From the NCBI RefSeq assembly GCF_902459465.1, contig NC_047068.1, forward strand, positions 17,980,001 to 18,044,000: a stretch of 64,000 nucleotides of DNA, in the 5' to 3' direction. This document shows, in pieces, positions 25,915 through 48,661 of the stretch. Both the position numbers and the translations under genes were made by a program. Position 1 is the first letter of the stretch. Each line of letters opens with the position of its first letter. Origin of the DNA: Asterias rubens (lineage: Eukaryota). The notes under the pieces were generated by a model, which searched no databases, had not been told where the DNA came from, and worked only from the letters and a program-made list of their open reading frames with translations.

Positions 25915-26981
25915 ATGAGAGACGCAGGAGGACACGAAGGAGGCTCCCCAGATGGTGTCCGTAACCATCACGATGGAAACACTGGCTTTTGCAACTTCCT
26001 CTGTGCCGCCAAGCCTCTCATAAACAGGTTTTCTTGCAGTTTGATATGCTTTGCTGCTGGTTTCGGATTAATAATTTATGGGATAGTGAGCTACATAAGT
26101 CTAGCACATGTGAGTCCCGGTGTAGCTTGGCAGCGTTTTATGTATATCGGCATCGGTGCTTTGACGATAGGAACCGGTGCTCTTGCTTTAGGGAGACTGT
26201 GCTGTCTTTACCGAACGTATCGACGCCATGAGCAGACAACGCCAAATGTTGCCCTACATGGGAACTTGGGCCCACGACAGCCACAAGTATGGATAGCCGG
26301 TGGACAGACGACACCCAACCACCCTTACGGACCTGGGCAACAACATCCCCAACATGGGTGTCCTCCAGTAGGTTCGCAGTATCCTACAGGGGCATACCCT
26401 CAACAACAACCCCATCCCCAAGCAGGGGGTGCGGTGCCGACACCCAACCTACCTTACGGACCTGGACAACAACAGCCCCAATATCCTCCTCCAGCAACAG
26501 TGGGTCCGCAGTATCCTTCAGGGGCGTACCCTCGACAACAACCCTATCCCCAAGCAGGCCTGGGAGTGGTGCCGCTCAATCAGCAAAACACACCTGTACA
26601 GACAGGTGTATCATATGGGTATGTGCATTATAAAGTGTAAAAGTATGGTGTTTGTGCTAAGTATTTAGCAAAATCCTGTTTTGTGCATGTTTTAAAATAT
26701 TATACAGTTTCGCCCACGCCTCCCCACGGCAACAGATATAGCCAAAGTTTGTGTTTGTTTGTTTATTTTTGGTATGTTGTTTGTTTAGTTTGTGTGTACA
26801 ACTATTACTGTAAGTAATGTTGAACATTGATTCAAGCAGTGTCTGTTTTGTGCTTTATAGGTACTCATCACATCCAGGGTACCCGCCCAATGCCCACCAT
26901 GCGCAAGAGCCACCACCTACACCATCATCACCACCTCCTGCTTATGACGATGCAGTTAAAAATGAGCAAAATGAAATATAA
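25915..26981 (+). CDS. Unnamed 2-TM membrane protein with Pro/Tyr/Gln-rich PPxY tail (paralog 2), 274 aa
   Basis: Exon 1 25915-26618 ends gg|gtatgt. Exon 2 26861-26981 follows tttatag| in phase 2 and encodes ...SSPPPAYDDAVKNEQNEI*. The TM region aligns to paralog 1 (FAAGFGLIIYGI / FGFGIGLMLYGI; WQRFMYIGIG / WQGFSFIGIG). Confidence 0.85.
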
Positions 26982-28780: not shown

Positions 28781-29978
28781 ATACTGGGTCAAAAATGTTT
28801 TCATTTTACCACTCAAGTTCGAGAAGTTTATCTGAAAACAGTGAACACTGGAGCGAGAAATGTGTCTGGGCCTACACAGTACACAGACACTCATTCATAA
28901 TTTACACAATGGAGCAATATTATGCTTACACACTGAGCAAATGGTAACAAACACCATTGGACGACGAAAGTTGGTTGTTACTGAAAACTAAAATTAATGA
29001 TACAAAAACGAATGTTTATGGGCCTATCTATAGACCTACTCTTCCAAAATAATGTGTCCCACTTGTATTACACCCATCCTGTCCATGCACAGAGTCTGTA
29101 CCGCTGTAGACTCATGTCACTCGACCATCGAATTCCGGCTCCAAATACCGGCGAAATTGGTTCAGTATTGCCCCTTACAAAGCCCCGTGTAAGACTGCAG
29201 GGAGAGAAACAAAGAACTCACATAAACTTACTTTGTGAAAATCTTGGTTTCCCGTTAAGAGCTAGAAGAAATTTTGTCTCCTTCGTTCCCGAGTAATTGA
29301 TTTAAACTTCACTGAAAATTGCGCACTTCTTCTTCACGGTCAAGTTGCAGACAACATAAGAATGTAGTGCGAGAACCGTGTCACTCTTGTGTGATTGCGC
29401 CGTAAAACTATGCCTAATTATGAAGTTGGAGTCAAAGTAAAGATGGTTAGATAATAATCTTGTTTGAAATTCTATTTAGGAAATAATTTGCAAAGAAATT
29501 AGTAAAAAGGTCTTCTATGTGATATTTTAAGAAACTTCGTAGAGGCACTACTTACCAGTATGAGCGGATGAATAAGCCAAAGGAGTACGGTAAACACACG
29601 AAAGACCTTACACTGGTCCCCTGTCTCAATCCGTACTACTTTCCACTTAACTTTGAGGGACTACCATGCACCTGTTGTTGATTGGTCGACGAAGATGGTT
29701 ATTTTGTTTTAGTAAACATTCAGATTTGTTCTATTATAAGTGCAAATACAAAATGTCCCCTCCTTTTACACTGTACACATCGGAGGTAGATTTTATTGTC
29801 GATAAACGTGCGATAAAAGTAATACAAACGGGAAGATTCTCAACATTATTTTGTGTAAAGTGCGCCCTCAATCGAGTAAAAGAATTCCCTTCCCATCATG
29901 CAGTGTTCTGACGACCGCCATTTTCAATTCGAGTTTCTAAACAAACACAGGGCAGTGTAACAAACTATTGTTTTGAAA

Positions 29979-31893
29979 ATGAGTACGCCTAGTGAAGTTT
30001 CAACCCCCGCAGGGGATAATAATGCCAAGGAGTTAAACGATTTCCTCATGAATACAGAAGAGCAACGGCTGGCATCTTTTTCAGACTGGCCGTTTGAGAA
30101 CGACTGCAACTGCATCCCGAGCAAGGTTTGTTATTTTATGATTTTTTGTTTTGAATTCGAATTCATGAATTCTGAATAATTGTGATGTCTGAACTGACCG
30201 CTGTCTGTGATTCTTTTTGTTGACACGTACGACTGTCCGACTGTCATGAGTGTGACTGACTGTAGAATGTATAGTGTACTGAAGTTTATTTTTATTTCAA
30301 ACAACAATTTGTAAACCTCCACATGTGGCACAAGTCATGTATATTGTATTCTGGATTTCTTCTAAGCTGTAGCGATTAGGCTTAAGTTTCAAATGTTATT
30401 GTTTGGGTAACTGTATTGTGTATGGATGCTATTGTATTTAGCGCCATGGATGAGCACTTTCATCCTGTTCATAGATTTGTGTACTTCATAATTTTATTTT
30501 ATTTTATTATTAACTATCTCTATTGATTTATCTTTCTAGATGGCAGCAGCTGGGTTTTACCACAGCCCAACTCCTCAAGAGCCAGACTTGGTTCGATGCT
30601 TTATGTGCTGCAAGGAACTTGACGGATGGGAACCATCAGATGATCCGATGTTAGTATAAAGAATATGTGAAAATCTGAATGTGTCTGACCATTATTTTAA
30701 TTTGTTACTTGTTTATTTATTTATCTATTTATTTAGTTTCTATTTTGTAATGTTTTGTGGAAGGTTAAGATTGTGAATTTGTGTCATATTAAGAGAACTT
30801 AGAGAAGTTGTGTTATAAACAGCAATGGTTGTTGTTAAGCAAATGTAAAACAGGTGGAAGTATAGGGATCTGGACAGGGCTCAAATTTGAGAGGAAAATA
30901 AATCACAAATTGTGTACAAAATTTGATTAACAATCGTAGACCAGATTCAAAATGACTTGAACAAGCTCTGCTTCAACACTCCAGAGAATGACTTGACAGA
31001 TGTTTTATCAGAGTCATTGTTGAAATTGTTTACAAAAATATTACAAAACAATGATTAGGTCTAATGTTAAACATGCTAAAAGGCCCAATGCTAAAAGTAC
31101 TGACATCGGGCCTGTGGTCCAGTGTTAATCTCAAGCCCTGAGATCACTCCACTAAAAGTGACCGACGATAATAAAACATACCTACAGAATCCGCTCTTAA
31201 TATATCTTCATTCTATGCTTTCTTCTTATACAGGGAGGAGCATAAATCCCATGCTCCGAAGTGTGCCTTCATTAACATAAAAAAGGACAAGGATATGACA
31301 ATTGCAGAGTTCTTGAAGTTAGAATCGGCTAGACAGCAAAACAGGGTTGTAAGTACATACAGAAGAAATCTCATTGGGGAGCGGGGCTGCAGTCTGCCAC
31401 ATTTCTTTTAAATTTTAACTGAATTAGATGGCTTTAAGCAAGGAGGCTTGAGGTTTAGGCAGGGCAGCTTTCTTTGTAAAGAGCTGGACACTATGTAAAA
31501 TGTACAATTTTACGTTACAGGTTTTATGGCTTTTGTCTTGCACCCTCAACGAAAGATATTGGCAAAATAGGGAGACCACTTTCAAAAATGGTCGATTGGT
31601 CGGCACCATCAGTTTCCCAAATATAACTTTTGCAGTGTCCGTCGTACCTCAAAATGGGCCAACTGGCTTAATGTGTAGAGCACCAGCACATTAATACAGG
31701 TGTCTCAGGTTCAAATCCTGCTGTTGTAATAGACTTTATTTCTTTGTTTAACCCAGAAGTCTGGAAGTGTCTCATCCCTAGAAATGGTTGTTTTTTGTTG
31801 CAGAAAGGAGGGGTTGAGAGTCGGAAGAAAGAGTTCAGTTACGAAGCACAGAAGACAAGAGAGGAGATTGAGAACATGGCTTGCATGAATTGA
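29979..31893 (+). CDS. BIRC5: Survivin (single-BIR IAP), 153 aa, 4 exons
   Basis: Exons 29979-30125, 30540-30649, 31234-31348, 31804-31893; phases consistent. BIR motif [44 protein letters not shown] with CCHC zinc ligands, then a C-terminal helix. Confidence 0.95.
31658..31745 (+). mobile_element. tRNA-derived SINE head in survivin intron 3
   Basis: tggcttaatgtgtagagcacc (A-box-like) and ggttcaaatcc (B-box, 31708-31718); stems degenerate. Confidence 0.6.
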
Positions 31894-33364
31894 ATGTCTA
31901 CACCTTTGCCATGAGGCGGCCATCTTGCGTTCTCCCATTCAAATCAATGTAACCAAACTGAGGCTGGCAGGAGAAATAGTCTGGTTCCTTTTTGTACATG
32001 TAATGTCAGCATCAATTACTGTATGTGATACAGGGGAAATGACCAAGATGGTGCCAGATAAGTGTCATGGTCAAGGGCTGCAGAATTTAAGTTTATATCT
32101 CAATGGAGTATTTTTTGTGACTCTTATTTTTGAACTATTTGTTGTCTCTTGCAGATTAAAAACTTGTTTGTTTTAACTCTGCCATTTTATATACACATGA
32201 ATCAAGCAAATCTGTTGGTTCTGCCGTGTGTTTTACATTTATTTTAATTGTGTTAATTTTATATTCAGTAAACTAGATTTATTCAAACCCTAATAAATTT
32301 GGTGTAAAAAGTCCCCCCCCCCCCCCATTTAAATATTTATAATTAGCTGGGAGACTGTAGTGGGCAGTTTGTTACTCTGTCATGTATAATTGTTAATTTT
32401 GAGGATGTTTAGGTCACTGTCACTAAACCTAACCCTAACCACACTGTAAGCGATGCATTTTTGTAGGCGAGTTGGCTGTTTGTAGTTAGAAGTTGGCCGA
32501 TACCAAATTTGAAAAAACCAGTGATTTCATTAAAAAAACATCTTTTTGTAAATAAGAAGCGTGTGGTTTGATGATCTTTTGTAGCGTTTGTCATGTTTGC
32601 AATGCATTGTCTCTTTTGTTTAACCTTGTCCTTTTGGTCTTGCCTGTTTTTTCAAAACTAACTACCCAAAACAAACACAAAAAGACATTCTGTGTGATGT
32701 TGAATTATTAAAATTTTATTTACTGTACAGAACTCGGACTGATGTATTACTTGCTTTGAAGTCAGTGAGAGTCATAGTAATTGCTTTCAAAAACTGACGG
32801 CCAAAAGTACTGAGTGCTTTCACTCATGGAAATTACAACCAAACAAAGTTAAATATCAACATGTACTCCTTTCTGTGCCCATACTTGAAGACATAACATA
32901 TAACAATCATCTTGGCTGTAACTGCAGATTGAAGAAACATAAGTATCGTTTTGTTTACATTCCAACTTGAGAGATCGATTAAATTCAACTCTATATAAAA
33001 ATGCCCCAATTCTGATGTACTTTCATTATAGAAAAAGGACTTAATTTACAATAGGCAAAAGCTCAAGTTATGTAAGCTTGAAATCAATCCAGTCTTATAT
33101 CACAGTATACCTACAATGTATATGGTTTGGGTAAATTTGTCTGTGGACAGCCAAACCAAACGGCGCTCCCATAATGTACACCATACCTCAGAGACTGGTA
33201 TTGCCCAAACGCAGGCCTGATAACATATGATAAAAGACACTTCAAAGTACATTTAAAAAGATTGCATACTGTAAGATAGTGGCACTTTCGGAATACACAA
33301 CGTAAATCAGATGTTCCACCTTTGCACTAAAAGAGTTTGTACTGATTTTCTTAGATGATATGTT

Positions 33365-33510
33365 CAAGCCTGGTTTTTCATATGTGAGAGGGCAGGGCAT
33401 CATTATTGGAAAATCTGAAGTCCATTGGAAACCTTTTAAGGGGCACCAAGGCCAAGACCAGGGTAATAAAGGCCATGGACTTTTGCTGTTTCTGTGTAAT
33501 TCCAGGCGTG
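33365..33510 (+). mobile_element. CAGG-ended MITE family C copy
   Basis: caagcctgg...aaggggcaccaaggccaagaccaggg...aattccaggcgtg. Confidence 0.65.
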
Positions 33511-33571
33511 GCACTCCACTCAATATACATGTCAATGTGTTTTTAAATATATAATATTATCTCAAGATCAA

Positions 33572-36500
33572 TTAACTTCTGCCAGATCTAGCCTCATCAA
33601 TTTTCCGTCGGACTCCGGAGCATGTGAGAGTCAGCTCAGCGTGTTGGCGCTTCAAGCTCTCCAGTTTTCCCCTCAGCTGGTCACCTTCATCCTTACGATC
33701 CTCAAAGTCACGTAGTAACGGCGTGTTACCGAGTAGTCCTGATTTCTGTCTGAGCTTTTGGTTATCGATTCTCAGGCTGTCTCTCGCCTTCTTCGTCCTG
33801 GATAGAACGTCTCTTTTCTGCCGAGGAGAAATATTTTTGAATTACTGAGGGTTTTAATTGAAACTGAGGAAAAAATGAGTGATGAGAGCTCTGTGACTTT
33901 AAGGGCCTTGTCATAGGAGGTAAATTTTCCAGCAATCAAGATTGATTAGCAGTTGAGATTGATACACAGTTAAGCCCAACCTTAGCTTTTTGTGAAATAG
34001 GCCCCTGGGCTTATGAATGCTCCCAAAAATAGGAAATAGGAAAAAGTAGTTTGGGACCAATTTGATCCCACGTACATTATTTAATGCGTGAAGGAAATAA
34101 TACTTTGCTTTTGGTCCCAATGTTCAAAGACATGCAATCCTCTTATGCAAATGAGAGGCTGTTGAGTTTTAACCCCTGACCTACCTGAGCAACCAATGAC
34201 TCTACTTCCTTCAGTTTGCCCTTTTGAACCTGGTTCTCGGCCTGTACAAACTGCAGTTTCTCCTTGACGTGGGTCAGCACCTGGACTGTGCTTGTAATCT
34301 TCTTGCGAAGCTTCAGAAGTTCCTAGTTATACACGAACAATAAATACAACATTTAAGTACCATTCATTCACATACATGTGCATGAATATTATAACACAAG
34401 GCAATTTTGTGTGTATAAATGCCCACAAGCCAAGTTTCAAAGCTCTGCTTACCACCCAATTTCGCACTGTCAATCACCATATGACAATTCTCCGCTTACT
34501 GCGCGTATTAGCGAAGCATGTCTAGTAGCTTTGAGTATGCACGCGAGGAAGCGAAAATTCCCTGCTTACCTGTGAAATACGCTTGCATAAATGTGGAATT
34601 CCATCCGTGCTTTCATAAGCGCCAATTTTATGCTTACGGTCCAAAACCATGAAATTGGGCTCTGTTTGTAAGTCATTGTTATTCAACGTTGCTACTTTGA
34701 TGCAGTGATTTCACACTAAACCTACCTCGTTCCTCTCTTCAATCTTCTCATTATACGTCTGGTTCTCAATCTTAAGCTGCTCAAAGTCAATAAGATGCAG
34801 TCCTTCAGCAAGCTCCTCCTTAGCCTTGAGCTGCTGCTCGCGCTTCCTCAGTCGATTCCTCAGCTTAATGTTCTCCAGTCTTACTTGCTTGACCTCCTCC
34901 TCCTTCCGAGCCTCATTCAAGAGATACTGCTCTGTATCCTGTAAAGCATCGAGAAAATAATTTAATTTGTAATCTGATAAACGGGGTAATGGAACCAGGC
35001 CTGGAATTACACAGAGGCCACTGAGGGAATGCCCCTGTTCGTGCTGTGAACAGGGGCCAATTTCATAGAGCTCCTTAGCACAAGTAAAAGCAAGATGCCA
35101 GTCAGAAATGGTACAGCGTCATGGTGCTTTGGCTGGGAAGTTTACAAAAAAACTGCTCAAGTACAAAACAATCCTGCTAACTTGAAAAAGGTTATTAAAA
35201 CCAAAACCCCATATTATGCACCATTTGGAACTGGTAGCCTGCTTATTTTTGCTTAGCAAAAAATTATGAAGGAAAATATTCTGCTTAAGTAGCTCTATCA
35301 AATTGGGCCCAAGGTAAGAAGTTGTAAGAAGTTGTTTGCTCTAGGTCTGCTTGCCAAAAGTGGACGCCAACGAACCTTTGGAGTGATGGCTTTCCCTGTG
35401 CGGCTATTGATAGCGATTTCAGCCGACTGTTGTTTGAGCACGGTGAACTGATTGGTCTCATGCTCCACAGCATCCAGCTTGTCTGTACGACGTTCCTTCA
35501 GGTCCTCCAGCTGGAGGCTCAGGTTCTCACGCTCTTCTTCCTCTTGCTTCCGAAGCTCTTCAAGATTCGCTGTTGGGGAAAAATGCTGAATGGTTTTTAT
35601 GGAAGCAGGGCCGGAATTTGAGAGAAAAAAATACAAGACCACAGGGCTTGTTCCTGAAAATGTTTACTGGACTAAAATTGTTTTTTCAAGACCCAAATTA
35701 TAATGATGGCATAATTTTAAAGTGAGAGATCTCCTGCACTATGCATTTAACTCTTCCATGCACCATTTTAGTGATAAATTGTTCATATGGATCAAAAGTT
35801 GTTTATTTATTTTTTGCTTATGACGACCCCAAAAACACAAGTCGCAAAGGCATCACCAAAGCGTCCTCATTCTAAAAACTGTGTGGTCGTGCAATCTTTG
35901 TTTTTCGTTTGACAACCTTTTTTTAAAAGAATTTTAAACTGGCAACTGTCATCAAAAGCAATGACTTCCAGTGGCTCTTCTCAGAACCGCCACTCCTCCC
36001 ATAAAAAATGTCAACAATTTACTGCTATTGACCCCTTGCTCGCGCGTCACACGCAGTGAATGATCCGTGCTCACCTAAAACTCCTAAAACACACACTTTC
36101 ACTGCATTACGCACATAATAGAGTTATATATAAAAACGTACAGTGAAATTGCCCACCAGTGTGGCGCATTCAAGACTTTTTTTGATGATGACATCAGGTG
36201 AAATGGGTCAATAGGCCCTAGTCCTTTTAATGAATTGCAGTTTCGGCAAAACAGATAACTATTTTTTTTTGCAAGGCTGTTGTCAACCAGGAAGGTTGTA
36301 CACTCACACATATATTTCAGATATCGCTGTTCCTGGTCTGTGACGTTCTTATCCATGTCTTGGCGTTGATCATCAGTCTTCTTTTTTCGGAAGTACTCTG
36401 CCAACTTATGTTGGAGCTGAACGTTCTGGCCATGTAGCTGCTCTCTGTCACTCATACAGGCCTGAGAAAGAAAATAAATTAGTTAGTCATTCAGATACCC

Positions 36501-39500
36501 ACTTTGTATCAGACCTTGAACTTTGTTCTTTATTCGAGGCATAGCCAGGAGCAAAGCAACTTGAGGAAAGTGTAATGTATTGAACCCTATGAAAGTACAA
36601 ACTTCACAATGACTTAAATAAGTGTTGTCATAGAATCACAACTTCTTGATTTGTGCAATTCATAATCATAGACATTAACCCAATGTTTGTATGAGAGAGA
36701 TGTACTTATACCAGCTTGGTTTTTACATCCCCAGCTGGAAGTTTGCAGAGTTCCCTTGAAGGGAAGATCTTCTAAACAAAGAAACAAACAAACAAACCTG
36801 GTACATCTCGAGGAGTTCTTCTCTGGTCATCCATGGTTCCTCCTCATCGTCATACTCTTCCTCCTCTTGGGGGGATTCTACAAATAAACAATTATCAGAA
36901 AAGTACAGTAAATCTACTAGAATTTTACAACATTGGATTTTGAAAGAGTACATGTATATTCATTCCAATTTTTCAGCTGTGAAAAATAACCAATGTCATC
37001 AATTTTAGTTTTAAAGTTAGTAAAAAAAAGTTTAAAAAAAGAATGTTCTCGTCCTCTCCTGAAGACGAGTATACTGTTCGAAATGTCAAGACCAAACCGG
37101 CTCTTCTCAGAGCCAACACTCACACAAAAGCGAATTACACATGGTTGTACCCGCAAGTTTAATATTATTTTATACTTGTTAGGGTTTGTCTCTATTAGAG
37201 CAAGTGTTTAAAAGTTTTGTGCATTTTCTTTATTTTAATCAGTACACAGTCAATGGTTGCAAACCTCCACATGAAGATTTTGTCTGTATGTCACTTTGCA
37301 ACCTTTCAGTTTTCAACAGCTATATCCAAGAGCAAATAACCAAAGACTGTAATCCTCAAAACTTGGCACTCATATCTAAAAACAAACTTGCAAAGCTTCA
37401 AACTGTACATTCATGCAACTTTGAATTTGATGTTACAGAACTTACCCATTCTTTCTGGTGTGCCTGCTTCCAGCTGTTCTGGCTCCCCAGCCGGACTCCC
37501 CTCTCTAGATAATGGTTCAGTCACAGCTACCACAGGAGTCTCTGGTCTCTCCCCCTCTGCGAACGTATCACTCTGTGGAAGAGGGGAGGCTGGTTTCTCT
37601 TGTTCTCCTTCCTCTGGAGGGGCTTGTTCACCTCCTTCTGCATCTTCTCCTCCTTCTTGTTGCTCTTCTGTCTGTGTTGCTGGGGCGGACTCTTTACCCT
37701 CCTCTTCTACTTCTCCTTCAGGCTTCTCCTCCTGTCCATCTGCTTCATCACCTTCTGCTCCTTCTGTAACAGCTGATAGACAAATAACAGAAAATCTAAA
37801 TTTTTGTCCATAAACATTCATTTCAATGGCTTCCACCGGACATTTGTGGTGGCTTTGCTTGCTAAATGTGATTTAAAATACATAAAGACCAGCTAAATAT
37901 CACTTCAAGTGGTCTTGCTGGCTAGTTCAGTGTTGAATATGAAATAGGACTAAGGAAACAGCTAAAGGACTAGTAAAATGACCAGCTAACTGGTCCTGCT
38001 AACCAGTCAAAATCAAACCTTGGTCCAAAACCTTGTTGCAGTAAACAGGCATGAAAGCCGACCATTGGAAAGAGCATCGATTTTATTGAGCATAAGGACT
38101 GACCTAGATTTTTTAGGCCATTTAATTCATTTTTTTTAGATCTAAGAAAATCAGACTGAAGTAGGAAGAACAGTCCATGCCTGAGTAAAGAAAGTCACAT
38201 ATTTTGGCACTGTTGCTCTAACCTTACAAACAAGTTCGAAACAGATGACAAGAAATAAAGGAAGAAGACCCTAAAGAGATGGAGCACAGATCCGGCTAAA
38301 AAACATAATCTAACCGATCACCAACCTTCAGCATCTTCAGGTACATCTCCAGCTGCCTCTCCTTCCCCTTCTTTCTGCTCACCATCACCTCCCTCCCCCT
38401 CCTCACCACCTTCCTCCCCTGTCTCCAGTTTCTCTCCAGGCTCCTCCCCCTTCTCCGCTCCCTCTCCACCCTCGGCTGGATTCTCCGCATCTGGAGCTAC
38501 CTCTCCTTCCACAGCAGGGGCACTTGGCTCTCCATCCCCTGGAGCAGCTTCTTCTGCTGGGGGTGCATCTGTTGATGTTTCCTCTTGTGTCTCAGTAGGT
38601 GCATCAGGCTGAGCAGCATCTTCTGTTGGTGCTGGTGCTTCTTCTTTAGGTTACAAAAAAAGCAGGTTAAGAAAGTATTTAAAGCATTGTATCAAAAAGC
38701 TGAATGTTATTATATAGAGAGTAGATAAAAGCAATCCCCTTTTATAATGTCAAACATCATCTTAAAGGACACCCCTCAAAAGGCAAGGGCATCTATGCAT
38801 TTTCTCATTGGTATAGGGCACCCTAAGAGGAAACTGTAAACTTCTACTGGAACATTTCAAGGGCATGGAGTCAATCATTGTCTCTGAAGTATCGAGCCTG
38901 ACCCCTTTTCTATCAGTGCACAAGTTGTTACTCTTTAAAATATGTTGTTTTGAGTTGTAAATCTGGTTTCTAGCAGGGTTTTATCCATGATATGAAAAAG
39001 GGTGTCAAAAGGCTGGCCCAGGATCCTACACTGACATTGTCTCATGACAAAATCAAGTATTTGTACTATGGCCAACCTGTAGCAGCCTCTTCTCCAGCAG
39101 TTGGTTCAACCTCTGCAGCTCCCTCTGCTGATGGGGCTGTTTCTCCCTCAGCTGCTGGTGCAGCCTCAGTTTCAGCAGCTTCTGGTGCTGGAGTCTAGGT
39201 AGAAATAAAACGACAAACAAGGCAACAGTTAATTTCAAAGTCAGCCAACCACACAGACACTCAGTCAGTGAGGACTGAGGGGAATCTAAACAATCACGCA
39301 TTTTTTATTTATTAAAGGGAAGGTAGTACACGTTTGATAGTTGTCATAGACCAGGGTATTTGCATGACTTGGTTGTATTTACTATTAATAATTAAATTAA
39401 GTTTATTTTGAAACCACTTACAAATAATAGCATATTAATTACTGATAAGGATTTCCACCGATAGTGATTACTGATAGTAACAAGTGGTTTCAAAATTAAC

Positions 39501-39931
39501 TTAATTTAATGATCATTTAAATGGTCTGGACAATTTAGATTTAGAATACATGACTTAGCCTACTACATTAACAACATGAAAGTAAAATCTTTAAATGATT
39601 GAAATATGTATGAAAAAACAACACAAAACCATCAATAGAGCTTGTCTCGAAGTGACAACTAACACGCTAACATTCATCACCACCTGATCAGACATAACAT
39701 CTAAAAAATACAAAATGTTGTTTATTTTTTTTAATTGAATTGAAGGACTTAGTAACCATTGTTGTTTATCATTATGGTCACATTCAATGCATAAGGTATA
39801 AAAACAACACTTGGAAATGATAAAAAAAAACGCAGGTCTTTCAAAGTTACAGTGTGATATCAATTCGATACATTTTACAAAACAACTCTGACAAGTTGAC
39901 TAAATTTATTTACCTCTTCTGCATCGGCCAT
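33572..39931 (-). CDS. CCDC96: Coiled-coil domain-containing protein 96 (CFAP184), 601 aa, 10 coding exons
   Basis: Exons 39931-39914, 39194-39077, 38643-38326, 37772-37446, 36877-36798, 36461-36308, 35569-35376, 34938-34726, 34322-34185, 33817-33572; phases consistent, 1806 nt. Acidic N-terminus plus the signature LHLIDFEQLKIENQTYNEKIEERNEEL. Confidence 0.93.
34410..34644. mobile_element. GGGCCC-family MITE in CCDC96 intron
   Basis: gccaagtttcaaagctctgcttacc ... ccatgaaattgggctctg; internal similarity to 1854-2030. Confidence 0.65.
35052..35309. mobile_element. GGGCCC-family MITE, complete
   Basis: About 25-bp imperfect TIR ggggccaatttcatagagctccttag / cttaagtagctctatcaaattgggccc. It abuts a truncated family C copy starting at 34996. 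Confidence 0.8.
38745..38900 (+). mobile_element. CAGG-ended MITE family C copy
   Basis: ggcaagggc..agggcaccctaagaggaaactgtaaacttctactggaacatttcaagggc..gaagtatcgagcctg matches 42253-42428. Confidence 0.7.
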
Positions 39932-40233
39932 GTTGTTTTTACGTCGTCTCCTTGGAGTTTTAAAGTCAGTGCCATACCCTGACTTAGCTATACAAACACT
40001 CACATAACATTTGCGGCACCAGTCTACGTATTTCAACCTCGTGCTGAGTTAACACTTTTTAACGTTTAGAGTAATAGTGTTAACCTGAATACGAGGTTGA
40101 AGCTGTACCCGCGAAATTTTAAGCAAAATTGGCGCAAAAACAAAAAACGAACACAGCAGTTCATTCGTTGTTGTGTGACTGGAACAGCTGGCTGTGTAAG
40201 ACCAGAACTTGAAAAATCTTCTAACAACAAAAC
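39932..40233. promoter_or_regulatory. Bidirectional promoter region CCDC96/TK1 with E2F-type sites
   Basis: The two start codons are 302 nt apart and divergent. TTTCGCGG on the minus strand (40109-40116) and TTGGCGC (40129-40135). Confidence 0.7.
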
Positions 40234-43200
40234 ATGGATAGAAGACGACTGTCAAATGATATTTCTTCAAGCCATAAAACGGGTCAAATCCAGGTAAGCT
40301 TATCCATTGTATTATAAAAACTAAAATAGAAAGAAAAATGAAACTGATGAATGATTGAAAATGAAAGAAAGAAGAATTGCACACACACTTACTGACACAC
40401 AGTGTCAGTCAGCAGGACAGTGGTCAGTGCACACTGACAATGGACACAGCCATGATGGGAAAGTTATCCAAATTTGTATTAATTATTATTATATTAATTA
40501 GTTAATTCTGAAGAAAGTAAATTATATAAAGAAAAGAAAACTTGGGTGTCAGAACCCCATAGCTCATCGCCATCGTCGGTGATGAAATTTTGTAACCCCC
40601 CATGTCATCCAATCCATCCTAAAATTGTAAAGATCATCACATTCAGTTCACTGTGCGGTGGCATGGATGATGGGGGGAAGAACTGATCATGCCCATCAAT
40701 CCATCATCAATGGTGCCAAATAAGGGGACGGAGTCCAGCCTATTTGCACGATTTAAATTGGATTTTTACCATACACTGACTCGGGCAATTTATTCCTCCA
40801 TGCTCAGGCACACACTACCAATACCATTACCAATGCACTACAGTCTTTTTTACAGAGTAGGTAGGGTAGGTCCTCGGCTCAGTGCTGCTTGCAAAATCAG
40901 TGATACTGATTATAGTTTGTTTATCAGATTTTGCAAGCAGCACTGAGGACCTACTCTATCAAAAGCCCCTTTCACACGAGAGCAATTTAGCAAGGGTCCC
41001 TTGCTAAATTGTAGCATGGTTGTAAGCATTTACAAAATGCACCTTGTGTGAAAGGAAAATAATTTTTGGAGTGTCCGGGGTCCCTTGTCAAATCTTGTCC
41101 AACATTGCTACATTTTGTCGGAGGTCCGGACCTACGACAAAATCTTACACTAACGGAAGTTTTGACCAAGGACGTGGGCTACATCATCGTGTGAAAGGAA
41201 TCCTTGTTTATTGAACGACGTCCTAGGTGAAAATGCCCATACAGTGCATGCTATTGTGGGTACTATCTTGTCCAATCAAGGTGATCAGGATTACCAATTC
41301 GTCATATCACTCTCATGTCACACAAGGGTTGTTAGTTTTTTAACTTTGCAGTGGGAAAGCTCACAAAATCAGTCAAACACGGTGATAACAAATAAACAAT
41401 CCACGCTCGTAAATTTTGTTGCAAGGGATCCTGGCTACATTTTGGCCGTGTGAAAAGGGCTAAAGTAAGCTTAAATGTATATATAACATTACTCATTAAT
41501 TTTGTGTTTTATGGCAAAATACTTTTAAAATTAGTTTTAAACCACTTTTCATTTTCTTGCAGGTGATCTTTGGACCAATGTTCTCAGGGAAAACGTTAGT
41601 ATTTGGGTTTTTTTTTCGTTTATACCACAATTTCCTTCAAGTTTATACTTCAATTCAAACTGTTACAAATGGTAAATTTGTACATAAATTAAGATTTTGT
41701 GCAGAATATTTTGCATTCTGTACATGTGTTTCATTTTTTTAAGGTCCTTTGGAAAAAGCCAACTCTGTGCCATCCCATTACTATTCAAAATCTTGTTTAC
41801 TTTTAAGTAAACTCTGATTTTGAAATAATCTTCTCGATCTAGATCTAAATAAACCCATCACTGTCACCAATCTGGTTTAATTATTTGTATTATTTTAACT
41901 TATCAGAACCGAGCTTATACGACGCATCAAACGCTATGAAATCGCAAATTATTCCTGTCTCCTCATCAAATACGCCAAGGACGATCGATATGACAAAGAT
42001 GGCGTGGCCACACACGACAGGTAAAATGTTTTTAAAGTTTATTTTGTCTAGGTTTCTTAGACAACTACTGCTTTCTCCTGTCTTTTTGTTTGCTTACGTG
42101 TTTTAAAGACAGTGGACACTATTGGTAATTGTCAAAGACAAGTCTTCTCACTCAGTGTATCTCAACATATACATAAATAACAAACCTGTGAAAATTTGAG
42201 CTCAATCGGAGGTCGAAGTTGCGAGATAATAATGAAAGAAAAAACACCCTTGCAGGGCTGTTTGCTTCGTTTTTGAAAGGGCAAGGGCACCAAGGCAATT
42301 TTCTCTTTGGCAAGGGCACCCTATGAGGAAATTGTAAATTTCTACTGGAGCATTTCATGGGCACCAAGGCAATGGCAAGGGGCAACGGAGGCAATCGCCT
42401 TCGTTGCCTCCGTGAAGTATCAGGCCTGCCCTTGTCACACGGAGTTGTGTGGTTTCAGATGCTTGATTTCGAGACCTCAAGTTCTAAATCGGAGGTCTTG
42501 AAATCAAATTCGTGGAAAATTACTTCTTTCTCGAAAACTACTCCACTTCAGAGGGAGCCGTTTCTCACAATGATTTATACTACCAACCTCTCGCCATTAC
42601 TCGTTACCAAGTAAGGTTTCGTGCTAATAATTATTTTGAGTAGTTACCAATATAAAGTCCACTGCCTTTTAAGTCCTTTTTTTTCTTATATTTTCATTTT
42701 CCAATATCAGTCTTTGATTTTCAGTGTTATACATTCCATATTTTGATCATTTTATTTCAGACAAGTTACTAAAGCAGTGGCAACAGAAATGCTGTACAGT
42801 CTTGCTGACATGACAGAGAAACATGATGTCATAGGCATTGATGAGGGTCAATTTGTAAGTACAGGCCAAATTAATTTCCTGATTTTCGAAACTAATTTTT
42901 GTACCATCACCTCTCGGCGATATTGAATTGCATCAAACTTTCTATGCTTCAGAAAAGTGGTGGCATCTTGCTTTCAATCTGTATCATTTCGCAAATTATT
43001 TTAAAGCTAATACCAGCCGACAAAACTACTTCAGCCTCTGCCATTTATGAACCAACTCTTTTCCATATTTCATTGTAATATCTATAATGCAGATACCACC
43101 TTTATTGTTTAGTAATTCATAGTTTCATACTGACTATTATTTGTCCTCACTACTTTACACTTATTGGTTCATAGCCACACCATCGTTTGTCAATTAGTTA

Positions 43201-44760
43201 TTTTTATTTGCTATTTAAATCTCCTGGGTTTTTTTCCCGGATACCTTCCCTTTACCCTTTGCTCCTCTTTTTGATTTAAAGTGATATGTTTATATTTTGT
43301 ACTTGTTTATGCCATTGCCTTTAAGGTCCAATTTCGATCAAAAGTATAATTTACCACCTTCCTACTACTAGTTTGTAATTATTTACACATGTATTTTTGC
43401 CATTTTGAATTTGCAGTTTCCAGACTGCGTTGAGTTTGCTGAAGATATGGCTGACCGAGGGAAGATAGTTATTGTAGCTGCTCTTGATGGAACATTTCAG
43501 AGGAAGGTGAGAAATGCTATGATTCATTTAATTTCCAAAGTTTCTAATCGGCAATTTAAATTGTTCAAAGGGTGACTCGCCCTTTTAGTTGCTGTGTACA
43601 GCGCAATGTGCGTCTAACACTAGTGGCCTATTCATTTGAATGCCAGTCATGACTTATGTCCTTGAGCAACAAAATTAACTATAAATTGCTTTCCTCACAC
43701 CAGGTGAATGATTGGAACCTTTGAGGGCTGCATTTGTGTTATGTTGGATTAATTCCTTTAGCTAACGAGCTGTTTGAGGTTGTAACATAAGCTCGTCAGG
43801 GACTTATGAAAGTTTGAGAAACGGTCAGATATACCTGCTGAGCAGGGATAATGGATGTTCTTAAGTACCTTGATCTAGGTACTAGCTTTACCAATACGCA
43901 AAGATAAGTTGAAATAAATACATTTCTGACCATAAAAATGTATTTTATGTTTGAATTCCTCCTTCAGGGCTTTGGAAGTATCTTAAATCTTGTTCCACTA
44001 GCAGAAAACGTCATCAAGTTGAATGCAGTTTGTATGCATTGCTACCAAGAAGCTTCGTACACTAAGAGGATGGGCATGGAAACAGCGGTAAAATTAAGAC
44101 CAATTCATTTGAATTAACTCTGCATTTAATCTGCTGTCATTTTCTTCAGATTTAGATAAATCCTGCTCTTTAAAATGAAGGTCAATATTTGGGATGGCTC
44201 TTAAAAATAATTTTAAAAATTTACAGTTATGAAAAGTACACAGCTTTCGATAGTATAAAGCATTTTGAGAATCATTCCACTTTGAATTAATGTGGTTATG
44301 GAAAACGATAGCAGGTTTTGTGCGACCAAATTTGAATCTGAGAACATCAGGACCTGTAAAGTCTTAAGTTAAAGCAATCTACATTATTCATCATGCGACC
44401 CGAAGTCGTCCGAAAATGTTCAAATACACACAAGCTTGCACAGTCTACTGTACACTTTTGCTCCTCAATTAAAGTTATAACAAAACAAAAAAGTCAACAA
44501 GTGTTTTAAAATCGAAACTGTATGTATACTTTGTGGTTATTTATCAGGTGGAGATTATTGGTGGAGCTGATAAGTACATGGCTGTCTGCAGAGAATGCTT
44601 CAAGAAACCATCATTCTTATCAACAACAACACCAGAAGAAGTCAATGAGGACGACGCCCTTCACACCCCAACCTGTGAGGAGACTCTTGCACATTCCAAA
44701 ATCCAGGGTAGAAAGTTATTCCCAACGTCAAATAATAACGCCGTAGCTCAGATTAGTTGA
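40234..44760 (+). CDS. TK1: Thymidine kinase, cytosolic, 240 aa, 7 exons
   Basis: Exons 40234-40293, 41563-41594, 41907-42020, 42761-42854, 43417-43506, 43968-44087, 44548-44760; phases consistent. [16 protein letters not shown]-loop, [28 protein letters not shown] zinc site, EIIGGADKY lasso. Confidence 0.96.
40854..40957. repeat. Small foldback in TK1 intron 1
   Basis: gtaggtcctc..agtgctgcttgcaaaatc / gattttgcaagcagcactgaggacctac inverted arms. Confidence 0.75.
40965..41460. mobile_element. Harbinger-like MITE
   Basis: gcccctttcacacg ... cgtgtgaaaagggc TIR; internal palindrome tttagcaaggg-t-cccttgctaaa. Related copy at 44839-45055. Confidence 0.7.
42107..42668 (-). mobile_element. MITE family A copy interrupted by a family C element
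   Basis: ttaa|agacagtggacac ... ccactgcct(t)|ttaa. The host sequence resumes exactly after the insert. Confidence 0.9.
42253..42428 (+). mobile_element. CAGG-ended MITE family C with perfect 6-bp TSD
   Basis: cccttg|cagggctg ... caggcctg|cccttg. Empty-site copies (9200-9581 reversed, 47814-48190) carry cccttg once. Confidence 0.9.
43600..43900 (+). mobile_element. Decayed SINE-like repeat in TK1 intron 5
   Basis: tatgtccttgagcaac..ttcctcacaccaggtg..ggaacctttgaggg matches the central domain of 54614-54935. Confidence 0.5.
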
Positions 44761-44838
44761 GTGAGGTGAACATTTTAATAAATGAATTTGCACATAGTTT
44801 GGTGCTCAATATGGGGAATGATGGTACATTTTCTATAG

Positions 44839-45055
44839 CCCTATTCACACCAAAGCAATTAAACAAGGGTCCTTTGCTTAATTTTTAACATGTTATATCA
44901 TAAAATGAAGCATTCATCAAGATTTAACAAGCACAGGACTTTGGACAGTACAAAATTGGTTGTCCTTTCACGCAAGGTACATGTTGTAAACAATTTTAAC
45001 CCTGTTACAATTTAGCAAGGGACCCTTGCTAAACTGCTCTCGTCTGAAAGGGGCG
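44839..45055. mobile_element. Harbinger-like MITE, second copy
   Basis: gccctattcacaccaaagcaatt ... ttagcaagggacccttgctaaactgctctcgtctgaaaggggc. Confidence 0.7.
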
Positions 45056-46855
45056 CCGATGGCGGTACTGGTTGGATGACTATGAATCAAAAGTATCACT
45101 TAATAGTCTTTATCCTCGAAAAATTTAACGTGCATTTTATATCATTGGGGCACTCACCAAAACATAGAGTCGAACTGCCTCTAGGTGGGGGGGGGAGTAC
45201 ATTGGTGTTTTGGTAAAAAAAAAACATTCTTTATCCCGATGCAAAATTTAACATCTATTATATCACTTATTTTCAAAATTTTAATATCTATAAAATAAAT
45301 TGTCAGAAAAAAGACTTTGTCTAAAACTTTTTTATAATTATTATTAGGATGTCAGTTTTAATCAAAACAATTGTCTCAGACAATAATAATGTTTAATCTG
45401 CTATTCAAATCTTTAGTTCTTTTTTAAGTAAAGCATTTGTATAGAGACTGCTTTTAATGTTATGTCAAGGCTGATTTAAATTAAATTCTACCTTTTAACT
45501 TAAATGTTTCAAATCAACTATAGGAATGTGACTGCTGTTAATGAACTTGTACTTTTATAGCTCTAAAACTGAATTTATTTTATGCCATTCACAACTACCA
45601 CCCAACTGAATAGTAAACTATGAATTGTTATTTACCTTTTTGTACAAATTTTTTAGATTGTGTGTAGTCGTTTTTAGGATACATGGTTATTCGTTGTCAT
45701 TTACACTGTCCAGTGCTGTACTTTTTAGATTGACCATTTACAACCATGTTTAGCTGAATGTTTGTTTTTAACTATCTACAGTAAAACTACCTCATTATGG
45801 AGTAATTGAAAATAAAACCTGTGTTTTGTGCTGTCTTTATTACAGTAGAATGGAATCGTCATTCCATATTGAAAAAAAAAAACTTAATGAATTTATTATG
45901 ATTCCCAAACAGTTTTGGAAACTACCTGAATACTACAATTCATGGACGACGCGAATACAGATTGCAAAAACTTTTACTGTGCTGCATGTGAGTGATTGTA
46001 ATCCAAAATGGTTACAGACTATTTATTTATCACCTTCGTACACGCAACGGGCGTCTGGGTACTGCACGCCGTGTGATAGTCTTCGGACTAGCGCACGGCA
46101 ATCCGATGCACTATCACACGGCTGTCGTCTAGTAGAACTAAGACATATCATGTGATGCGCTCTAAACCAATGAAAAGGCAGAATATTGGTAAGGGGTGTT
46201 ATAAACGTAAATATCACATTATATTTTTATAGCAATGAACGATCACATGCAAAAGTGCATGACCAAGAACATCCCCAATCAGTGATATGACATTATTCCC
46301 TTTTTGGCGTTCCATAGCTATACGACTTCTGCTGCGTACTAGACTGGTCCCCAGTCTTATTTATTGCATAAACCCATGGTGTAATGCGCGGCGGACACTG
46401 GCCTTGAAAAAAAAAACGCCTTCACGCACACGCACGCACACACAAGTGCAAGCTGTTTTCTTGATAAAAAGTAGACGAAAGTAAACGGTAAGCAAGCCAA
46501 TTTTGTACAGTAGTATCAGAAAATTCAAGCTCCCAAACTAGTTCGTGTTCTACGTCACACCATTGGTGTGATCAGTTGTGTGTTTATCAAAAGAGAATTC
46601 GTCCTTAAACTGTTTTTGTTTGCTGGTTCTTTCGCTTTCGGTGGCGTTGCTTGTTATTGGAACATTTTGACGTTGTTTGTACACACGAATATGGGATGCA
46701 TCTGGGGTGTGGCGGAGCATGGGAATATGGGTGAAAGTTGAAGCTATGCTATGTCTTATGGCTATGCCAGAAAAAAATGTGCTACTAAAAAGCCTGTCCT
46801 CTTAGTCTTAAATTCTTATCCTCTATTAAAAATTTATGGATTTTTTGTCAGACCT

Positions 46856-47574
46856 AGACCCAGTATTCAGTAACTGGGGCACTTTTTGTATACCTTTTTC
46901 AAAATTTTGACATTCTCGGGGTCGCACTAAATACCGACAACTCACGACAACTCTAGAAAACAATTTTTAAATGCACTTAAACAAAACATTTGAACATAAG
47001 TCAACCGTTAATTATATGCACAAGGGTCATTTTTGAATGTAAAAGAAAGTGTTTTTTACCCGAATTTAGTAATGAATGGTAATATCCGCCATGTTGTCTT
47101 TAAACGCTGGGGTGATACACATGTTGTCTATTATACCGCTGGGGTGATACAATATGCAAGATCAGAAGATGATTATTTACAATTTTTTTTTTAATTATCT
47201 CAAGGAGTTTAAATAAATCTTTTGTAAGTTTCCCCTTTAAACTTCGATTCCAGAGTGGCGGGTTAGTTACTGACAAGAAAGAAAAAAATCAGCAGCTTTT
47301 TTATTTTTTATACAGTTTACAGTTAGAAAATGATTTAGATGCATATGACTCTTGTGCACATATGTAACGATTGATTATGTTCAAATAATCTGTTAAAACG
47401 CATTTAAAAATTGTTGTTGTGAGTTGTCGTGAGGGGTCGTGAGTTGTCGGTATTTAGTGCGACCGCATTATCGCCATCATCGAAAAGATCATTATTAATT
47501 ATGAGTGTTATGAGTAATGACCGGTAGTGTCAAAATTCTGCAAAAAGGAATACAGCGCTCCAGTTACTGGGTCT
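46856..47574. mobile_element. Nested TIR elements (outer 46856-47574, inner 46919-47465)
   Basis: Inner: long TIR ggtcgcactaaataccgacaactcacgac, flanked by cattctcg/cattatcg. Outer: arms agacccag..cagtaactgggg..ttttgaca / tgtcaaaatt..ccagttactgggtct. Confidence 0.8.
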
Positions 47575-47813
47575 TGATTCTTTCGTATTTCGTTTTTAAA
47601 AACTGCATGTAAAATAGATTAGAGATTTTGTAATGTTCATTTTTCAAGAGAAGATGTCGTTTATTCCATTACAGTTAATTTTGAATTAATTATACGGCAC
47701 ATAACTCTATGATATAATTGAATATAAATAAATGAATTTGTGCGTTTCTGCCTCTCTATTGAAATTACGATTCATGTACATGTATTTTTACTGAATGTCC
47801 TGCTAATGTTTAA

Positions 47814-48588: not shown

Positions 48589-48661
48589 TACTCCTAGAAC
48601 TATGAGGTTAATTCCGCTATCGTCTCCTGTTAGCAGAACGAACCTCATAGTTCTAGGAGTA
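48589..48661. mobile_element. 73-bp mini-MITE with 21-bp perfect TIR and 9-bp TSD
   Basis: gtcacacac|tactcctagaactatgaggtt ... aacctcatagttctaggagta|gtcacacac. Confidence 0.85.

What the first reader, a model, noticed from the sequence alone, without database searches (positions are those of the whole stretch)
29979..44760. BIRC5 and TK1 are linked, one gene apart, as in human 17q25
Seen: BIRC5(+), CCDC96(-), TK1(+) within 15 kb. Established: in human the order is TK1-AFMID-BIRC5, with TK1 head-to-head to AFMID. In both, TK1 shares a divergent promoter with a middle gene and BIRC5 lies just beyond, but the middle gene differs and BIRC5 orientation relative to TK1 is flipped. Inference: an ancestral deuterostome linkage of two cell-cycle-regulated genes that survived local rearrangement, possibly because of co-regulation.
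Basis: partly seen in the sequence, partly recalled or inferred. Interest (0 to 1): 0.7.

Follow-up and report, generated by a model that had tools for sequence, protein, structure and literature searches.

The report
Starfish survivin–CCDC96–TK1 gene neighbourhood

Summary
Hand-built GT..AG models give BIRC5 (+, 4 exons, 153 aa), CCDC96/CFAP184 (-, 10 exons, 601 aa) and TK1 (+, 7 exons, 240 aa). These lengths match the Asterias amurensis annotation exactly.

- **CCDC96/TK1 pair.** The two genes share a promoter of at most about 224 bp that carries an E2F-like site. The same divergent pair appeared in all nine other non-vertebrate genomes I could inspect: four echinoderm genera, two hemichordates, Nematostella and the sponge Oscarella. 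Vertebrates pair TK1 with AFMID instead.
- **Threonine aldolase (THA1).** It is TK1's other neighbour in brittle star, sea urchin and both hemichordates. In mouse it lies next to Birc5. This ties the ambulacrarian and 17q25 neighbourhoods together.
- **BIRC5.** I could see it next to this block only in the two Asterias species. The 10 kb flanks were too short in the other ambulacrarians. It is absent within 10 kb of TK1 in Fugu and Oscarella.

Descent from a deuterostome ancestor is plausible, at about 60%. Nothing supports retention through BIRC5/TK1 co-regulation.

No paper in the searched library pairs CCDC96 with TK1. Other notes of this scan flag many starfish–human microsyntenies, but none covers this locus.

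The parts
29979..31893 (+). BIRC5/survivin gene, CDS in 4 exons: 29979-30125, 30540-30649, 31234-31348, 31804-31893 (153 aa)
   Evidence: GT..AG model with closed frame. Exon 2 has a Pfam BIR match, E=7e-11. Exon 2 aligns without gaps to human survivin residues 38-73 at 52 bits, against 33 bits for the next IAP. Exon 3 matches only survivin chains, residues 75-113. A. amurensis annotates a 153-aa BIR protein at the same place.
33572..39931 (-). CCDC96/CFAP184-like gene, CDS in 10 exons: 39931-39914, 39194-39077, 38643-38326, 37772-37446, 36877-36798, 36461-36308, 35569-35376, 34938-34726, 34322-34185, 33817-33572 (601 aa). It has an acidic N-terminal half and a C-terminal PF13870 coiled coil.
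   Evidence: Model. PF13870 is covered at positions 2-176 of 177 by exons 8-10. Exon 8 scores 60 bits against human and bovine CCDC96 and 37 bits against CCDC113. Database relatives are named CFAP184-like or CCDC96. RNA contigs join 39077 to 38643. A. amurensis annotates a 601-aa product.
39932..40233 (.). Shared divergent promoter between the CCDC96 ATG (39931) and the TK1 ATG (40234). Transcript ends lie at about 39951 and 40175, so the distance between transcription starts is at most about 224 bp.
   Evidence: RNA contig X3 record 12 extends 38 nt into CCDC96 exon 1. TK1 contigs start at 40175-40182. Sequence.
40109..40116 (-). E2F-like site CCGCGAAA (TTTCGCGG on the minus strand), about 65 bp upstream of the TK1 transcript start
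   Evidence: The same class of site occurs in the TK1 -250..+100 window in 7 of 9 non-vertebrate species, against 4.9% of control windows.
40128..40135 (.). ATTGGCGC: an inverted CCAAT box overlapping a second GC-rich E2F-like core
   Evidence: Also present in A. amurensis.
40234..44760 (+). TK1 gene, CDS in 7 exons: 40234-40293, 41563-41594, 41907-42020, 42761-42854, 43417-43506, 43968-44087, 44548-44760 (240 aa)
   Evidence: Model. Pfam TK match. 97.5% identical over all 240 residues to A. amurensis 'thymidine kinase, cytosolic-like'. RNA contigs chain exons 1, 3 and 6. The tree places it with asteroid TK1s in species-tree order.

Best explanation
The window, from an Asterias starfish, carries three ordinary single-copy orthologs.
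- Survivin (BIRC5) is a chromosomal-passenger protein.
- CCDC96/CFAP184 is an axonemal protein that with CCDC113 links radial spoke 3, dynein g and the nexin link (PMC7987202).
- TK1 is the cytosolic thymidine kinase.

CCDC96 and TK1 are transcribed divergently from one promoter of at most about 224 bp that contains an E2F-type site. This head-to-head pair is an ancient metazoan microsyntenic pair. It is most simply held together because any break between the genes would cut a shared promoter (inferred).

In the vertebrate stem the pair was dissolved. Human CCDC96 is treated as an intronless gene and lies elsewhere, and TK1 acquired AFMID as its new head-to-head partner (inferred).

BIRC5 lies tail-to-tail with CCDC96, 1.7 kb away. 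I read it as a passive remnant of an ancestral deuterostome neighbourhood that also held threonine aldolase (THA1). It has been locally rearranged, and co-regulation of BIRC5 with TK1 is not what keeps it there.

Shown: gene identities, the shared promoter, the phylogenetic spread of CCDC96<->TK1 and TK1-THA1, and BIRC5 adjacency in two Asterias species.

Inferred: that BIRC5's proximity to TK1 in starfish and tetrapods is by descent, and that the promoter is the constraint.
For: Gene identity.

Shared promoter.

CCDC96(-)<->TK1(+) arrangement in other genomes:
- A. amurensis, gap 299 bp
- Patiria, 295 bp
- Acanthaster, 346 bp
- Amphiura, 9.6 kb
- Diadema, 270 bp
- Saccoglossus, 186 bp
- Ptychodera, 232 bp, partner confirmed by tblastn
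- Nematostella, where an acidic CCDC96 exon lies less than 930 bp from TK1
- Oscarella, where the two genes abut

THA1 (PF01212) lies convergent just after TK1 in Amphiura, Diadema, Saccoglossus and Ptychodera. Mouse Tha1 lies between Birc5 and Socs3, with Tk1 and Syngr2 nearby (PMC555945).

Fugu has AFMID<->TK1. The literature agrees.

E2F-like sites are enriched in the shared promoter: 7 of 9 species against a 4.9% background.

A preprint on human intronless genes lists CCDC96 among them.
Against: - BIRC5 beyond CCDC96 could not be inspected in any non-Asterias ambulacrarian.
- An unidentified ENA contig, whose CCDC96 exon is closest to the sea urchin Diadema among the loci I held, showed no BIR-annotated ORF within 10 kb past that exon. 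No DNA was served, so this is only weakly negative.
- BIRC5 is absent within 10 kb of TK1 in Fugu and Oscarella.
- THA1 is on the other side of TK1 in ambulacrarians than in mouse, and it is missing from the Asterias window. Several rearrangements must therefore be assumed.
- No protostome or amphioxus was examined.
- Promoter sharing as the constraint is untested.
Confidence: 0.6

Rival explanations
1. One reading: BIRC5 and TK1 have stayed linked since the deuterostome ancestor because two cell-cycle-regulated genes benefit from sharing a regulatory environment.
For: Both genes lie within two gene positions of each other in Asterias and, by the literature, in human and mouse. The TK1 promoter has E2F-like sites. 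A TTTGAA (CHR-like) hexamer sits 2 bp upstream of the BIRC5 ATG.
Against: - The promoters are 10 kb apart and separated by a complete, unrelated gene.
- The intervening gene and BIRC5's orientation both differ between starfish and human.
- Fugu has CANT1, not BIRC5, beyond AFMID.
- A single hexamer is expected by chance about once per kb.
- By established knowledge the two genes peak in different phases (TK1 at G1/S via E2F, BIRC5 at G2/M via CHR).
Confidence: 0.1
2. Coincidence or convergence. BIRC5 and TK1 belong to the same ancestral chromosome, and local shuffling placed them two genes apart independently in the Asterias lineage and in tetrapods.
For: - BIRC5 adjacency was seen only in one starfish genus.
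- It is absent near TK1 in Fugu and Oscarella.
- Orientation and side relative to THA1 differ.
- With hundreds of windows scanned and about 85 synteny notes in this genome, a few chance matches are expected.
Against: - The neighbourhood as a whole is demonstrably old (CCDC96-TK1, TK1-THA1).
- THA1 independently links the ambulacrarian TK1 locus to the vertebrate BIRC5/TK1 locus.
- Rough arithmetic puts the chance of two given genes on an 800-gene linkage group lying within two positions at about 0.5%.
Confidence: 0.28
3. One of the genes is not the true ortholog, for example another IAP or a TK paralog, so the comparison with human is void.
For: None found. Exon 1 of BIRC5 alone is only weakly similar to survivin.
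Against: - Exons 2 and 3 match survivin specifically, and their ends fall at residues 38, 73, 75 and 113 of the human and mouse protein.
- The product is 153 aa with a single BIR domain.
- The TK1 tree follows the species tree with starred support.
Confidence: 0.02

Closest known systems
AFMID<->TK1 head-to-head pair of vertebrates (Li et al. 2006 as cited in bioRxiv 10.1101/169029; Davila Lopez et al. 2010, PMC2871058)
   Same: TK1 is transcribed divergently from a partner gene with less than 1 kb between starts. The pair is conserved across a whole clade. I saw it in Fugu with a 580 bp gap.
   Different: The partner here is CCDC96, not AFMID. The CCDC96 pairing is far older (sponge to hemichordate). 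The AFMID pairing is listed only for eight vertebrates.
Conserved ancestral microsyntenic pairs with bidirectional promoters (Irimia et al. 2012, PMC3514665), e.g. HSPE1-HSPD1
   Same: 5'-5' orientation, an intergenic distance well under 1 kb, and conservation across several animal phyla.
   Different: The two products are functionally unrelated (axoneme versus nucleotide salvage). RNA contig depths hint that they are not tightly co-expressed. The pair is lost in vertebrates, so human-centred surveys would miss it. I could not check whether it is in that paper's supplementary list.
Human 17q25.3 / mouse 11E2 cluster SYNGR2-TK1-AFMID-BIRC5-THA1(P)-SOCS3 (PMC555945; gene list in PMC9122507)
   Same: It contains TK1 and BIRC5 two genes apart, with THA1 beside them. 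TK1 has a head-to-head partner and BIRC5 lies beyond that partner.
   Different: The middle gene differs. BIRC5 is inverted relative to TK1. THA1 is on the other side of TK1 in ambulacrarians and absent from the Asterias window. SYNGR2 and AFMID are not in the window.

Membership tests
Survivin (BIRC5) | Single BIR domain with Cys-Cys-His-Cys zinc ligands | tested here: met
   Pfam BIR match on exon 2. In the alignments to survivin, CFMC aligns with CFFC and [10 protein letters not shown] with EEHRKHSPGC.
Survivin (BIRC5) | Closer to survivin than to any other IAP BIR | tested here: met
   52 bits against survivin, versus 33 for BIRC1e, 25 for BIRC7 and 24 for BIRC6. Exon 3 hits survivin chains only.
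Survivin (BIRC5) | Small protein: BIR plus a C-terminal helix, with no RING, CARD or UBC | tested here: met
   The product is 153 aa. The EFLKL linker/helix region aligns to residues 75-113. The A. amurensis annotation shows BIR only.
Survivin (BIRC5) | Chromosomal passenger complex function | not testable with these tools
   Needs localisation or knock-down experiments.
Thymidine kinase 1 (PF00265) | P-loop and zinc-binding lasso cysteines, with TK-family similarity over the full length | tested here: met
   [12 protein letters not shown] and CREC are read directly in the model. Pfam TK match. 60-77% identical to animal TK1s.
Thymidine kinase 1 (PF00265) | One-to-one ortholog of vertebrate TK1 | tested here: met
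   The tree follows the species tree and the window sequence nests in asteroids at 100/97 support.
CCDC96 / CFAP184 | PF13870 coiled coil at the C-terminus | tested here: met
   Exons 8-10 cover profile positions 2-176 of 177.
CCDC96 / CFAP184 | Closer to CCDC96 than to its paralog CCDC113 | tested here: met
   Human CCDC96 scores 59.7 bits against 37.5 for CCDC113. A 490-aa DUF4201 chain scores 77 and a 794-aa DUF4201 chain scores 62; I take these to be the Chlamydomonas and Tetrahymena CCDC96-type proteins. Relatives are named CFAP184-like or CCDC96. The test used exon 8 only, not a full tree.
Ancient microsyntenic pair with shared bidirectional promoter: CCDC96<->TK1 | Adjacency with conserved 5'-5' orientation in several phyla | tested here: met
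   Porifera, Cnidaria, Echinodermata (3 classes) and Hemichordata, in 10 of 10 non-vertebrate genomes seen. Protostomes and amphioxus were not examined.
Ancient microsyntenic pair with shared bidirectional promoter: CCDC96<->TK1 | Intergenic distance under 1 kb | tested here: met
   186-346 bp in seven genomes, abutting in Oscarella, under 930 bp in Nematostella, 9.6 kb in Amphiura.
Ancient microsyntenic pair with shared bidirectional promoter: CCDC96<->TK1 | Co-ordinated (or anti-co-ordinated) expression from shared elements | tested here: inconclusive
   The CCDC96:TK1 contig depth ratio ranges from about 14 to 0.3 across four RNA runs, but depth of assembled contigs is a poor measure. E2F-like sites recur in the promoter.
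Ancient microsyntenic linkage: BIRC5-TK1 | Linkage present in several independent deuterostome lineages | tested here: inconclusive
   Seen in Asterias, two species (window), and in human and mouse by the literature. Not visible in five other ambulacrarians because the flank was too short. Absent within 10 kb in Fugu.
Ancient microsyntenic linkage: BIRC5-TK1 | Conserved relative orientation | tested here: not met
In Asterias, BIRC5 is on the same strand as TK1.

The most novel reading that the evidence does not exclude
TK1's promoter may be an ancient two-way switch. For more than 600 million years it has faced a partner gene that is expressed in non-cycling cells. In most animals that partner is the ciliary gene CCDC96. 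In vertebrates it is AFMID, which the literature describes as anti-regulated with TK1. On this reading, E2F-dependent firing toward TK1 in S phase and firing toward the partner in quiescent or ciliated cells are mechanistically coupled. The partner would have been swapped at the vertebrate origin, when CCDC96 left as an intronless retrocopy.
Probability: 0.15. Interest if true: 0.6.

Novelty: new member of a known kind. Interest (0 to 1): 0.45.

Why it matters
- It adds a clean, very old example to the catalogue of gene pairs held together by a shared promoter. The example joins two functionally unrelated genes, a proliferation marker and a motile-cilium protein.
- It shows that vertebrates replaced the partner while keeping the head-to-head layout.
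- It gives a concrete, short (about 224 bp) conserved promoter with an E2F-type site. That promoter could be tested in echinoderm embryos for directional switching.
The status of the BIRC5/TK1 linkage depends only on what lies beyond the 3' end of CCDC96 in a few published chromosome-scale genomes.

Tried and rejected
1. Spliced proteins have no reference and I did not paste them. All database queries were therefore single exons, so full-length BIRC5 and CCDC96 homologs, and their genomic contexts, could not be fetched.
2. A TK1 exon 6 search of the representative library gave a coral TK1. That was used to list animal TK1s. No amphioxus entry was in the top 120.
3. The Gigantopelta (mollusc) look-up found no record, so no protostome was examined.
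4. The last look-up went to an unidentified ENA contig whose CCDC96 exon is closest to Diadema's. It returned a gene table but no DNA.
5. A metagenome scan with CCDC96 exon 8 gave 80 loci, mostly short transcript-like contigs. None carried TK1 or BIRC5, and this says little.
6. THA1 was sought in the window with Saccoglossus exons and not found.
7. The Oscarella adh_short gene beside CCDC96 is not similar to the window's SDR gene, so that apparent extra linkage was dropped.
8. No RFX X-box was found in the shared promoters.
9. No Rfam family matched in 29000-46000.
10. Supplementary tables were not held for the Irimia 2012 and Simakov 2015 surveys. The Robert 2022 tables do not mention these genes.
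Full report
**What is in the sequence**

The window is intron-bearing animal DNA with no N runs. Stop-free stretches on both strands of 29.5-45 kb showed exon-sized pieces of three genes. I joined these by hand at canonical GT..AG sites. All three reading frames close.
- BIRC5 (+): four exons, 29979-31893, 153 aa.
- A CCDC96-type gene (-): ten exons, 39931-33572, 601 aa. It has an acidic N-terminal half of about 290 residues and a C-terminal coiled coil.
- TK1 (+): seven exons, 40234-44760, 240 aa.

The models have independent support. Assembled RNA contigs from four public runs join CCDC96 exon 2 to exon 3 at 39077|38643 and run 38 nt further into exon 1. They also chain TK1 exons 1, 3 and 6 with spacing that fits the 32-nt exon 2. 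The Asterias amurensis genome annotation has the same three genes in the same order and orientation, with products of 153, 601 and 240 residues.

The window's TK1 is 97.5% identical over its whole length to the A. amurensis protein. Other notes of this scan name the genome as Asterias rubens.

**Are the names right?**

*Survivin.* Pfam on single exons gives BIR for BIRC5 exon 2. Exon 2 aligns without a gap to human survivin residues 38-73 at 52 bits. The next-best IAP scores 33 bits. Exon 3 matches only survivin chains, at residues 75-113, including the zinc-ligand His and Cys and the EFLKL segment. Exon 1 is weak on its own. With a 153-aa single-BIR product, this is survivin and not another IAP.

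*CCDC96.* PF13870 spans exons 8-10 of the middle gene. Exon 8 matches human and bovine CCDC96 at 60 bits and CCDC113 at 37 bits. Two DUF4201 chains of 490 and 794 aa, which I take to be the Chlamydomonas and Tetrahymena CCDC96-type proteins, score 77 and 62 bits. Database relatives of that exon are named CFAP184-like or CCDC96. CCDC96 with CCDC113 forms an axonemal complex that links radial spoke 3, dynein g and the nexin link (PMC7987202).

*TK1.* Pfam gives TK for exons 6 and 7. A maximum-likelihood tree of 22 animal TK1s follows the species tree at its supported nodes and places the window's protein inside asteroids.

The refuting condition that a gene is a non-orthologous paralog is therefore not met.

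**The shared promoter**

The CCDC96 ATG (39931) and the TK1 ATG (40234) are 302 bp apart on opposite strands. CCDC96 transcripts reach at least about 39951, and TK1 contigs begin at 40175-40182. The two transcription starts are therefore at most about 224 bp apart.

The interval contains CCGCGAAA at 40109, which reads as an E2F-type TTTCGCGG on the other strand. It also contains ATTGGCGC at 40128, an inverted CCAAT overlapping a GC core.

**Synteny in other animals**

I could not paste spliced proteins, so I first searched the representative library with TK1 exon 6. I took a full-length coral TK1 from the hits and used it to list animal TK1s with their sources. I then read the 10 kb on either side of TK1 in eleven genomes.

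| Genome | Upstream of TK1, divergent | Gap to TK1 | Downstream of TK1 |
|---|---|---|---|
| A. amurensis | CCDC96, with BIRC5 beyond it | 299 bp | LITAF-like |
| Patiria | CCDC96 | 295 bp | unnamed gene |
| Acanthaster | CCDC96 | 346 bp | unnamed gene |
| Amphiura | CCDC96 | 9.6 kb | THA1 |
| Diadema | CCDC96 | 270 bp | THA1 |
| Saccoglossus | CCDC96 | 186 bp | THA1, then CLEC16A |
| Ptychodera | CCDC96 (confirmed by tblastn) | 232 bp | THA1 |
| Nematostella | CCDC96 (partial model; acidic exon under 930 bp away) | under 930 bp | no gene called |
| Oscarella | CCDC96 | abutting | CEP209_CC5-domain gene |
| Takifugu | AFMID, with CANT1 beyond it | 580 bp | SYNGR2, then C17orf99-like Ig genes |
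| Gigantopelta | no record found | | |

Every non-vertebrate genome I saw has a PF13870 gene on the opposite strand directly upstream of TK1. THA1 here means the threonine aldolase gene, recognised by PF01212. It is convergent with TK1 wherever it appears. Fugu shows no BIR gene within 10 kb. The literature agrees that AFMID/TK1 is a head-to-head pair conserved from Fugu to human (bioRxiv 10.1101/169029). It is listed for eight vertebrates only (supplement of PMC2871058).

**A second link to 17q25**

Threonine aldolase lies just downstream of TK1 in Amphiura, Diadema, Saccoglossus and Ptychodera. In mouse, Tha1/Gly1 lies between Birc5 and Socs3. In both mouse and human its near neighbours are SYNGR2, BIRC5 and TK1 (PMC555945). 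This independently ties the ambulacrarian TK1 locus to the vertebrate TK1/BIRC5 locus.

THA1 is not in the Asterias window or the asteroid loci. CLEC16A lies near TK1 in both Saccoglossus and Oscarella, and a LITAF-like gene follows TK1 in Asterias. From memory, both human orthologs are in 16p13.13, a region usually regarded as a whole-genome-duplication paralog of 17q25. I did not test this.

**What could not be shown**

BIRC5 itself was seen beside the block only in the two Asterias species. In Patiria, Acanthaster, Diadema, Saccoglossus and Ptychodera, CCDC96 fills the whole 10 kb flank. What lies beyond its 3' end is therefore unknown.

To look past it, I searched with the exon 8 stretch for short gene calls. 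I spent the last look-up on an unidentified ENA contig whose exon is closest to Diadema's among the loci I held. The table shows no BIR-annotated ORF within 10 kb downstream, but no DNA was served, so this is only weakly negative.

Oscarella has adh_short, Forkhead, GRAM and CLEC16A beyond CCDC96, and no BIR gene. A metagenome scan with exon 8 gave 80 mostly short loci without TK1 or BIRC5.

**Weighing the BIRC5-TK1 claim**

Rough arithmetic puts the chance that two given genes on a linkage group of about 800 genes lie within two positions at about 0.5%. This is inference, not a computed permutation. The scan has looked at hundreds of windows in this genome and holds about 85 synteny notes, so a handful of chance matches is expected.

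Against chance stand two things: the demonstrated age of the neighbourhood, and the independent THA1 link. Against simple inheritance stand the different middle gene, the flipped BIRC5 orientation, THA1 on the other side of TK1, and the absence of BIRC5 near TK1 in Fugu.

I put descent from the deuterostome ancestor at roughly 60%. Independent juxtaposition within a conserved chromosome gets a little under 30%.

The promoters are 10 kb apart with an unrelated gene between them. By established knowledge the two genes peak in different cell-cycle phases. The only hint is a TTTGAA hexamer 2 bp upstream of the BIRC5 ATG, which is expected by chance about once per kb.

**How the block probably works**

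The CCDC96/TK1 pair fits the class described by Irimia et al. (PMC3514665). That class has divergent orientation, an intergenic distance far below 1 kb, and conservation across phyla. The simplest reason for persistence is that any breakpoint would cut a shared promoter.

An E2F-type site (TTTSSCGS on either strand) occurs in the -250..+100 window of TK1 in 7 of 9 non-vertebrate species. It occurs in 4.9% of 350-nt control windows from the same loci. This fits an old E2F control of TK1 placed inside the shared interval. No RFX X-box was found.

RNA contig depths give CCDC96:TK1 ratios from about 14 to 0.3 across four runs. This hints that the two are not tightly co-expressed, but such depths are poor measures.

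A preprint on human intronless genes lists CCDC96 among them, whereas the gene has ten exons in starfish and several in the sponge. I infer that the vertebrate gene descends from a retrocopy and that the original beside TK1 was lost, leaving room for AFMID. This needs checking in basal vertebrates.

**Novelty**

No paper in the searched library holds CCDC96 (or CFAP184/FAP184) together with TK1 or thymidine kinase. The pair is not among the thymidine-kinase entries of the 2010 gene-order survey that are held as text. It may still sit in supplementary tables I could not read.

It is a new member of a known kind, an ancient bidirectional pair. The BIRC5 part remains an open, easily settled question.

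Noticed in passing
L004, L005, L006, L007 (downstream of TK1); absent from window 44760-64000: Threonine aldolase (PF01212) is the convergent downstream neighbour of TK1 in brittle star, sea urchin and both hemichordates. It is missing from that position in the three asteroid genera. In mouse the same gene sits next to Birc5.
   Followed up: partly
window 51270-52110 (+); L006 32800-34564; L010 1-3391: A LITAF-like gene follows TK1 in Asterias. CLEC16A lies near TK1 in Saccoglossus and in the sponge Oscarella. From memory, the human orthologs of both are in 16p13.13, a paralogous region of 17q25. A scan note places a 16p13.3-like pair on the same starfish chromosome.
   Followed up: no
window 42100-42760 (TK1 intron 3), with copies at about 5538-5858, 9195-9588, 20661-21013 and 47809-48192: An interspersed repeat of a few hundred bases. 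It reaches summed contig depths around 10^6 in RNA-run contigs and has at least five further copies in the window and several in A. amurensis. A second repeat lies at 40820-41460 in TK1 intron 1.
   Followed up: partly
window 58912-61381 (-): A rhodopsin-type GPCR gene lies here: a 360-aa stop-free stretch at 58912-59991 and an N-terminal part at 61019-61381. A reverse-transcriptase fragment (60268-60843, minus strand) lies between the two parts.
   Followed up: no
window 29972-29977: TTTGAA, the consensus cell-cycle homology region hexamer, lies 2 bp upstream of the BIRC5 start codon. It is too short to mean anything without conservation in other genera.
   Followed up: no
window 33572-39931 and about 11.5 kb beyond the window's end: A scan note reports a DOK7-like gene just beyond the window. 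From memory, human DOK7 and CCDC96 are both in 4p16, which is odd if human CCDC96 is a retrocopy. Unexplained.
   Followed up: no
L001 1-24323 (-): The A. amurensis annotation has a 136-aa histone-fold gene model spanning the whole 24 kb locus over BIRC5, CCDC96 and TK1. It is probably an annotation artefact.
   Followed up: no
window 14267-14587 (+), 21998-22858 (+), 25786-26637 (+): A carbonyl-reductase-like SDR exon lies here, followed by a tandem pair of single-exon genes for two-transmembrane proteins with proline-rich PPxY-like tails. All lie upstream of BIRC5. The Oscarella adh_short gene next to CCDC96 is not similar to this SDR.
   Followed up: partly
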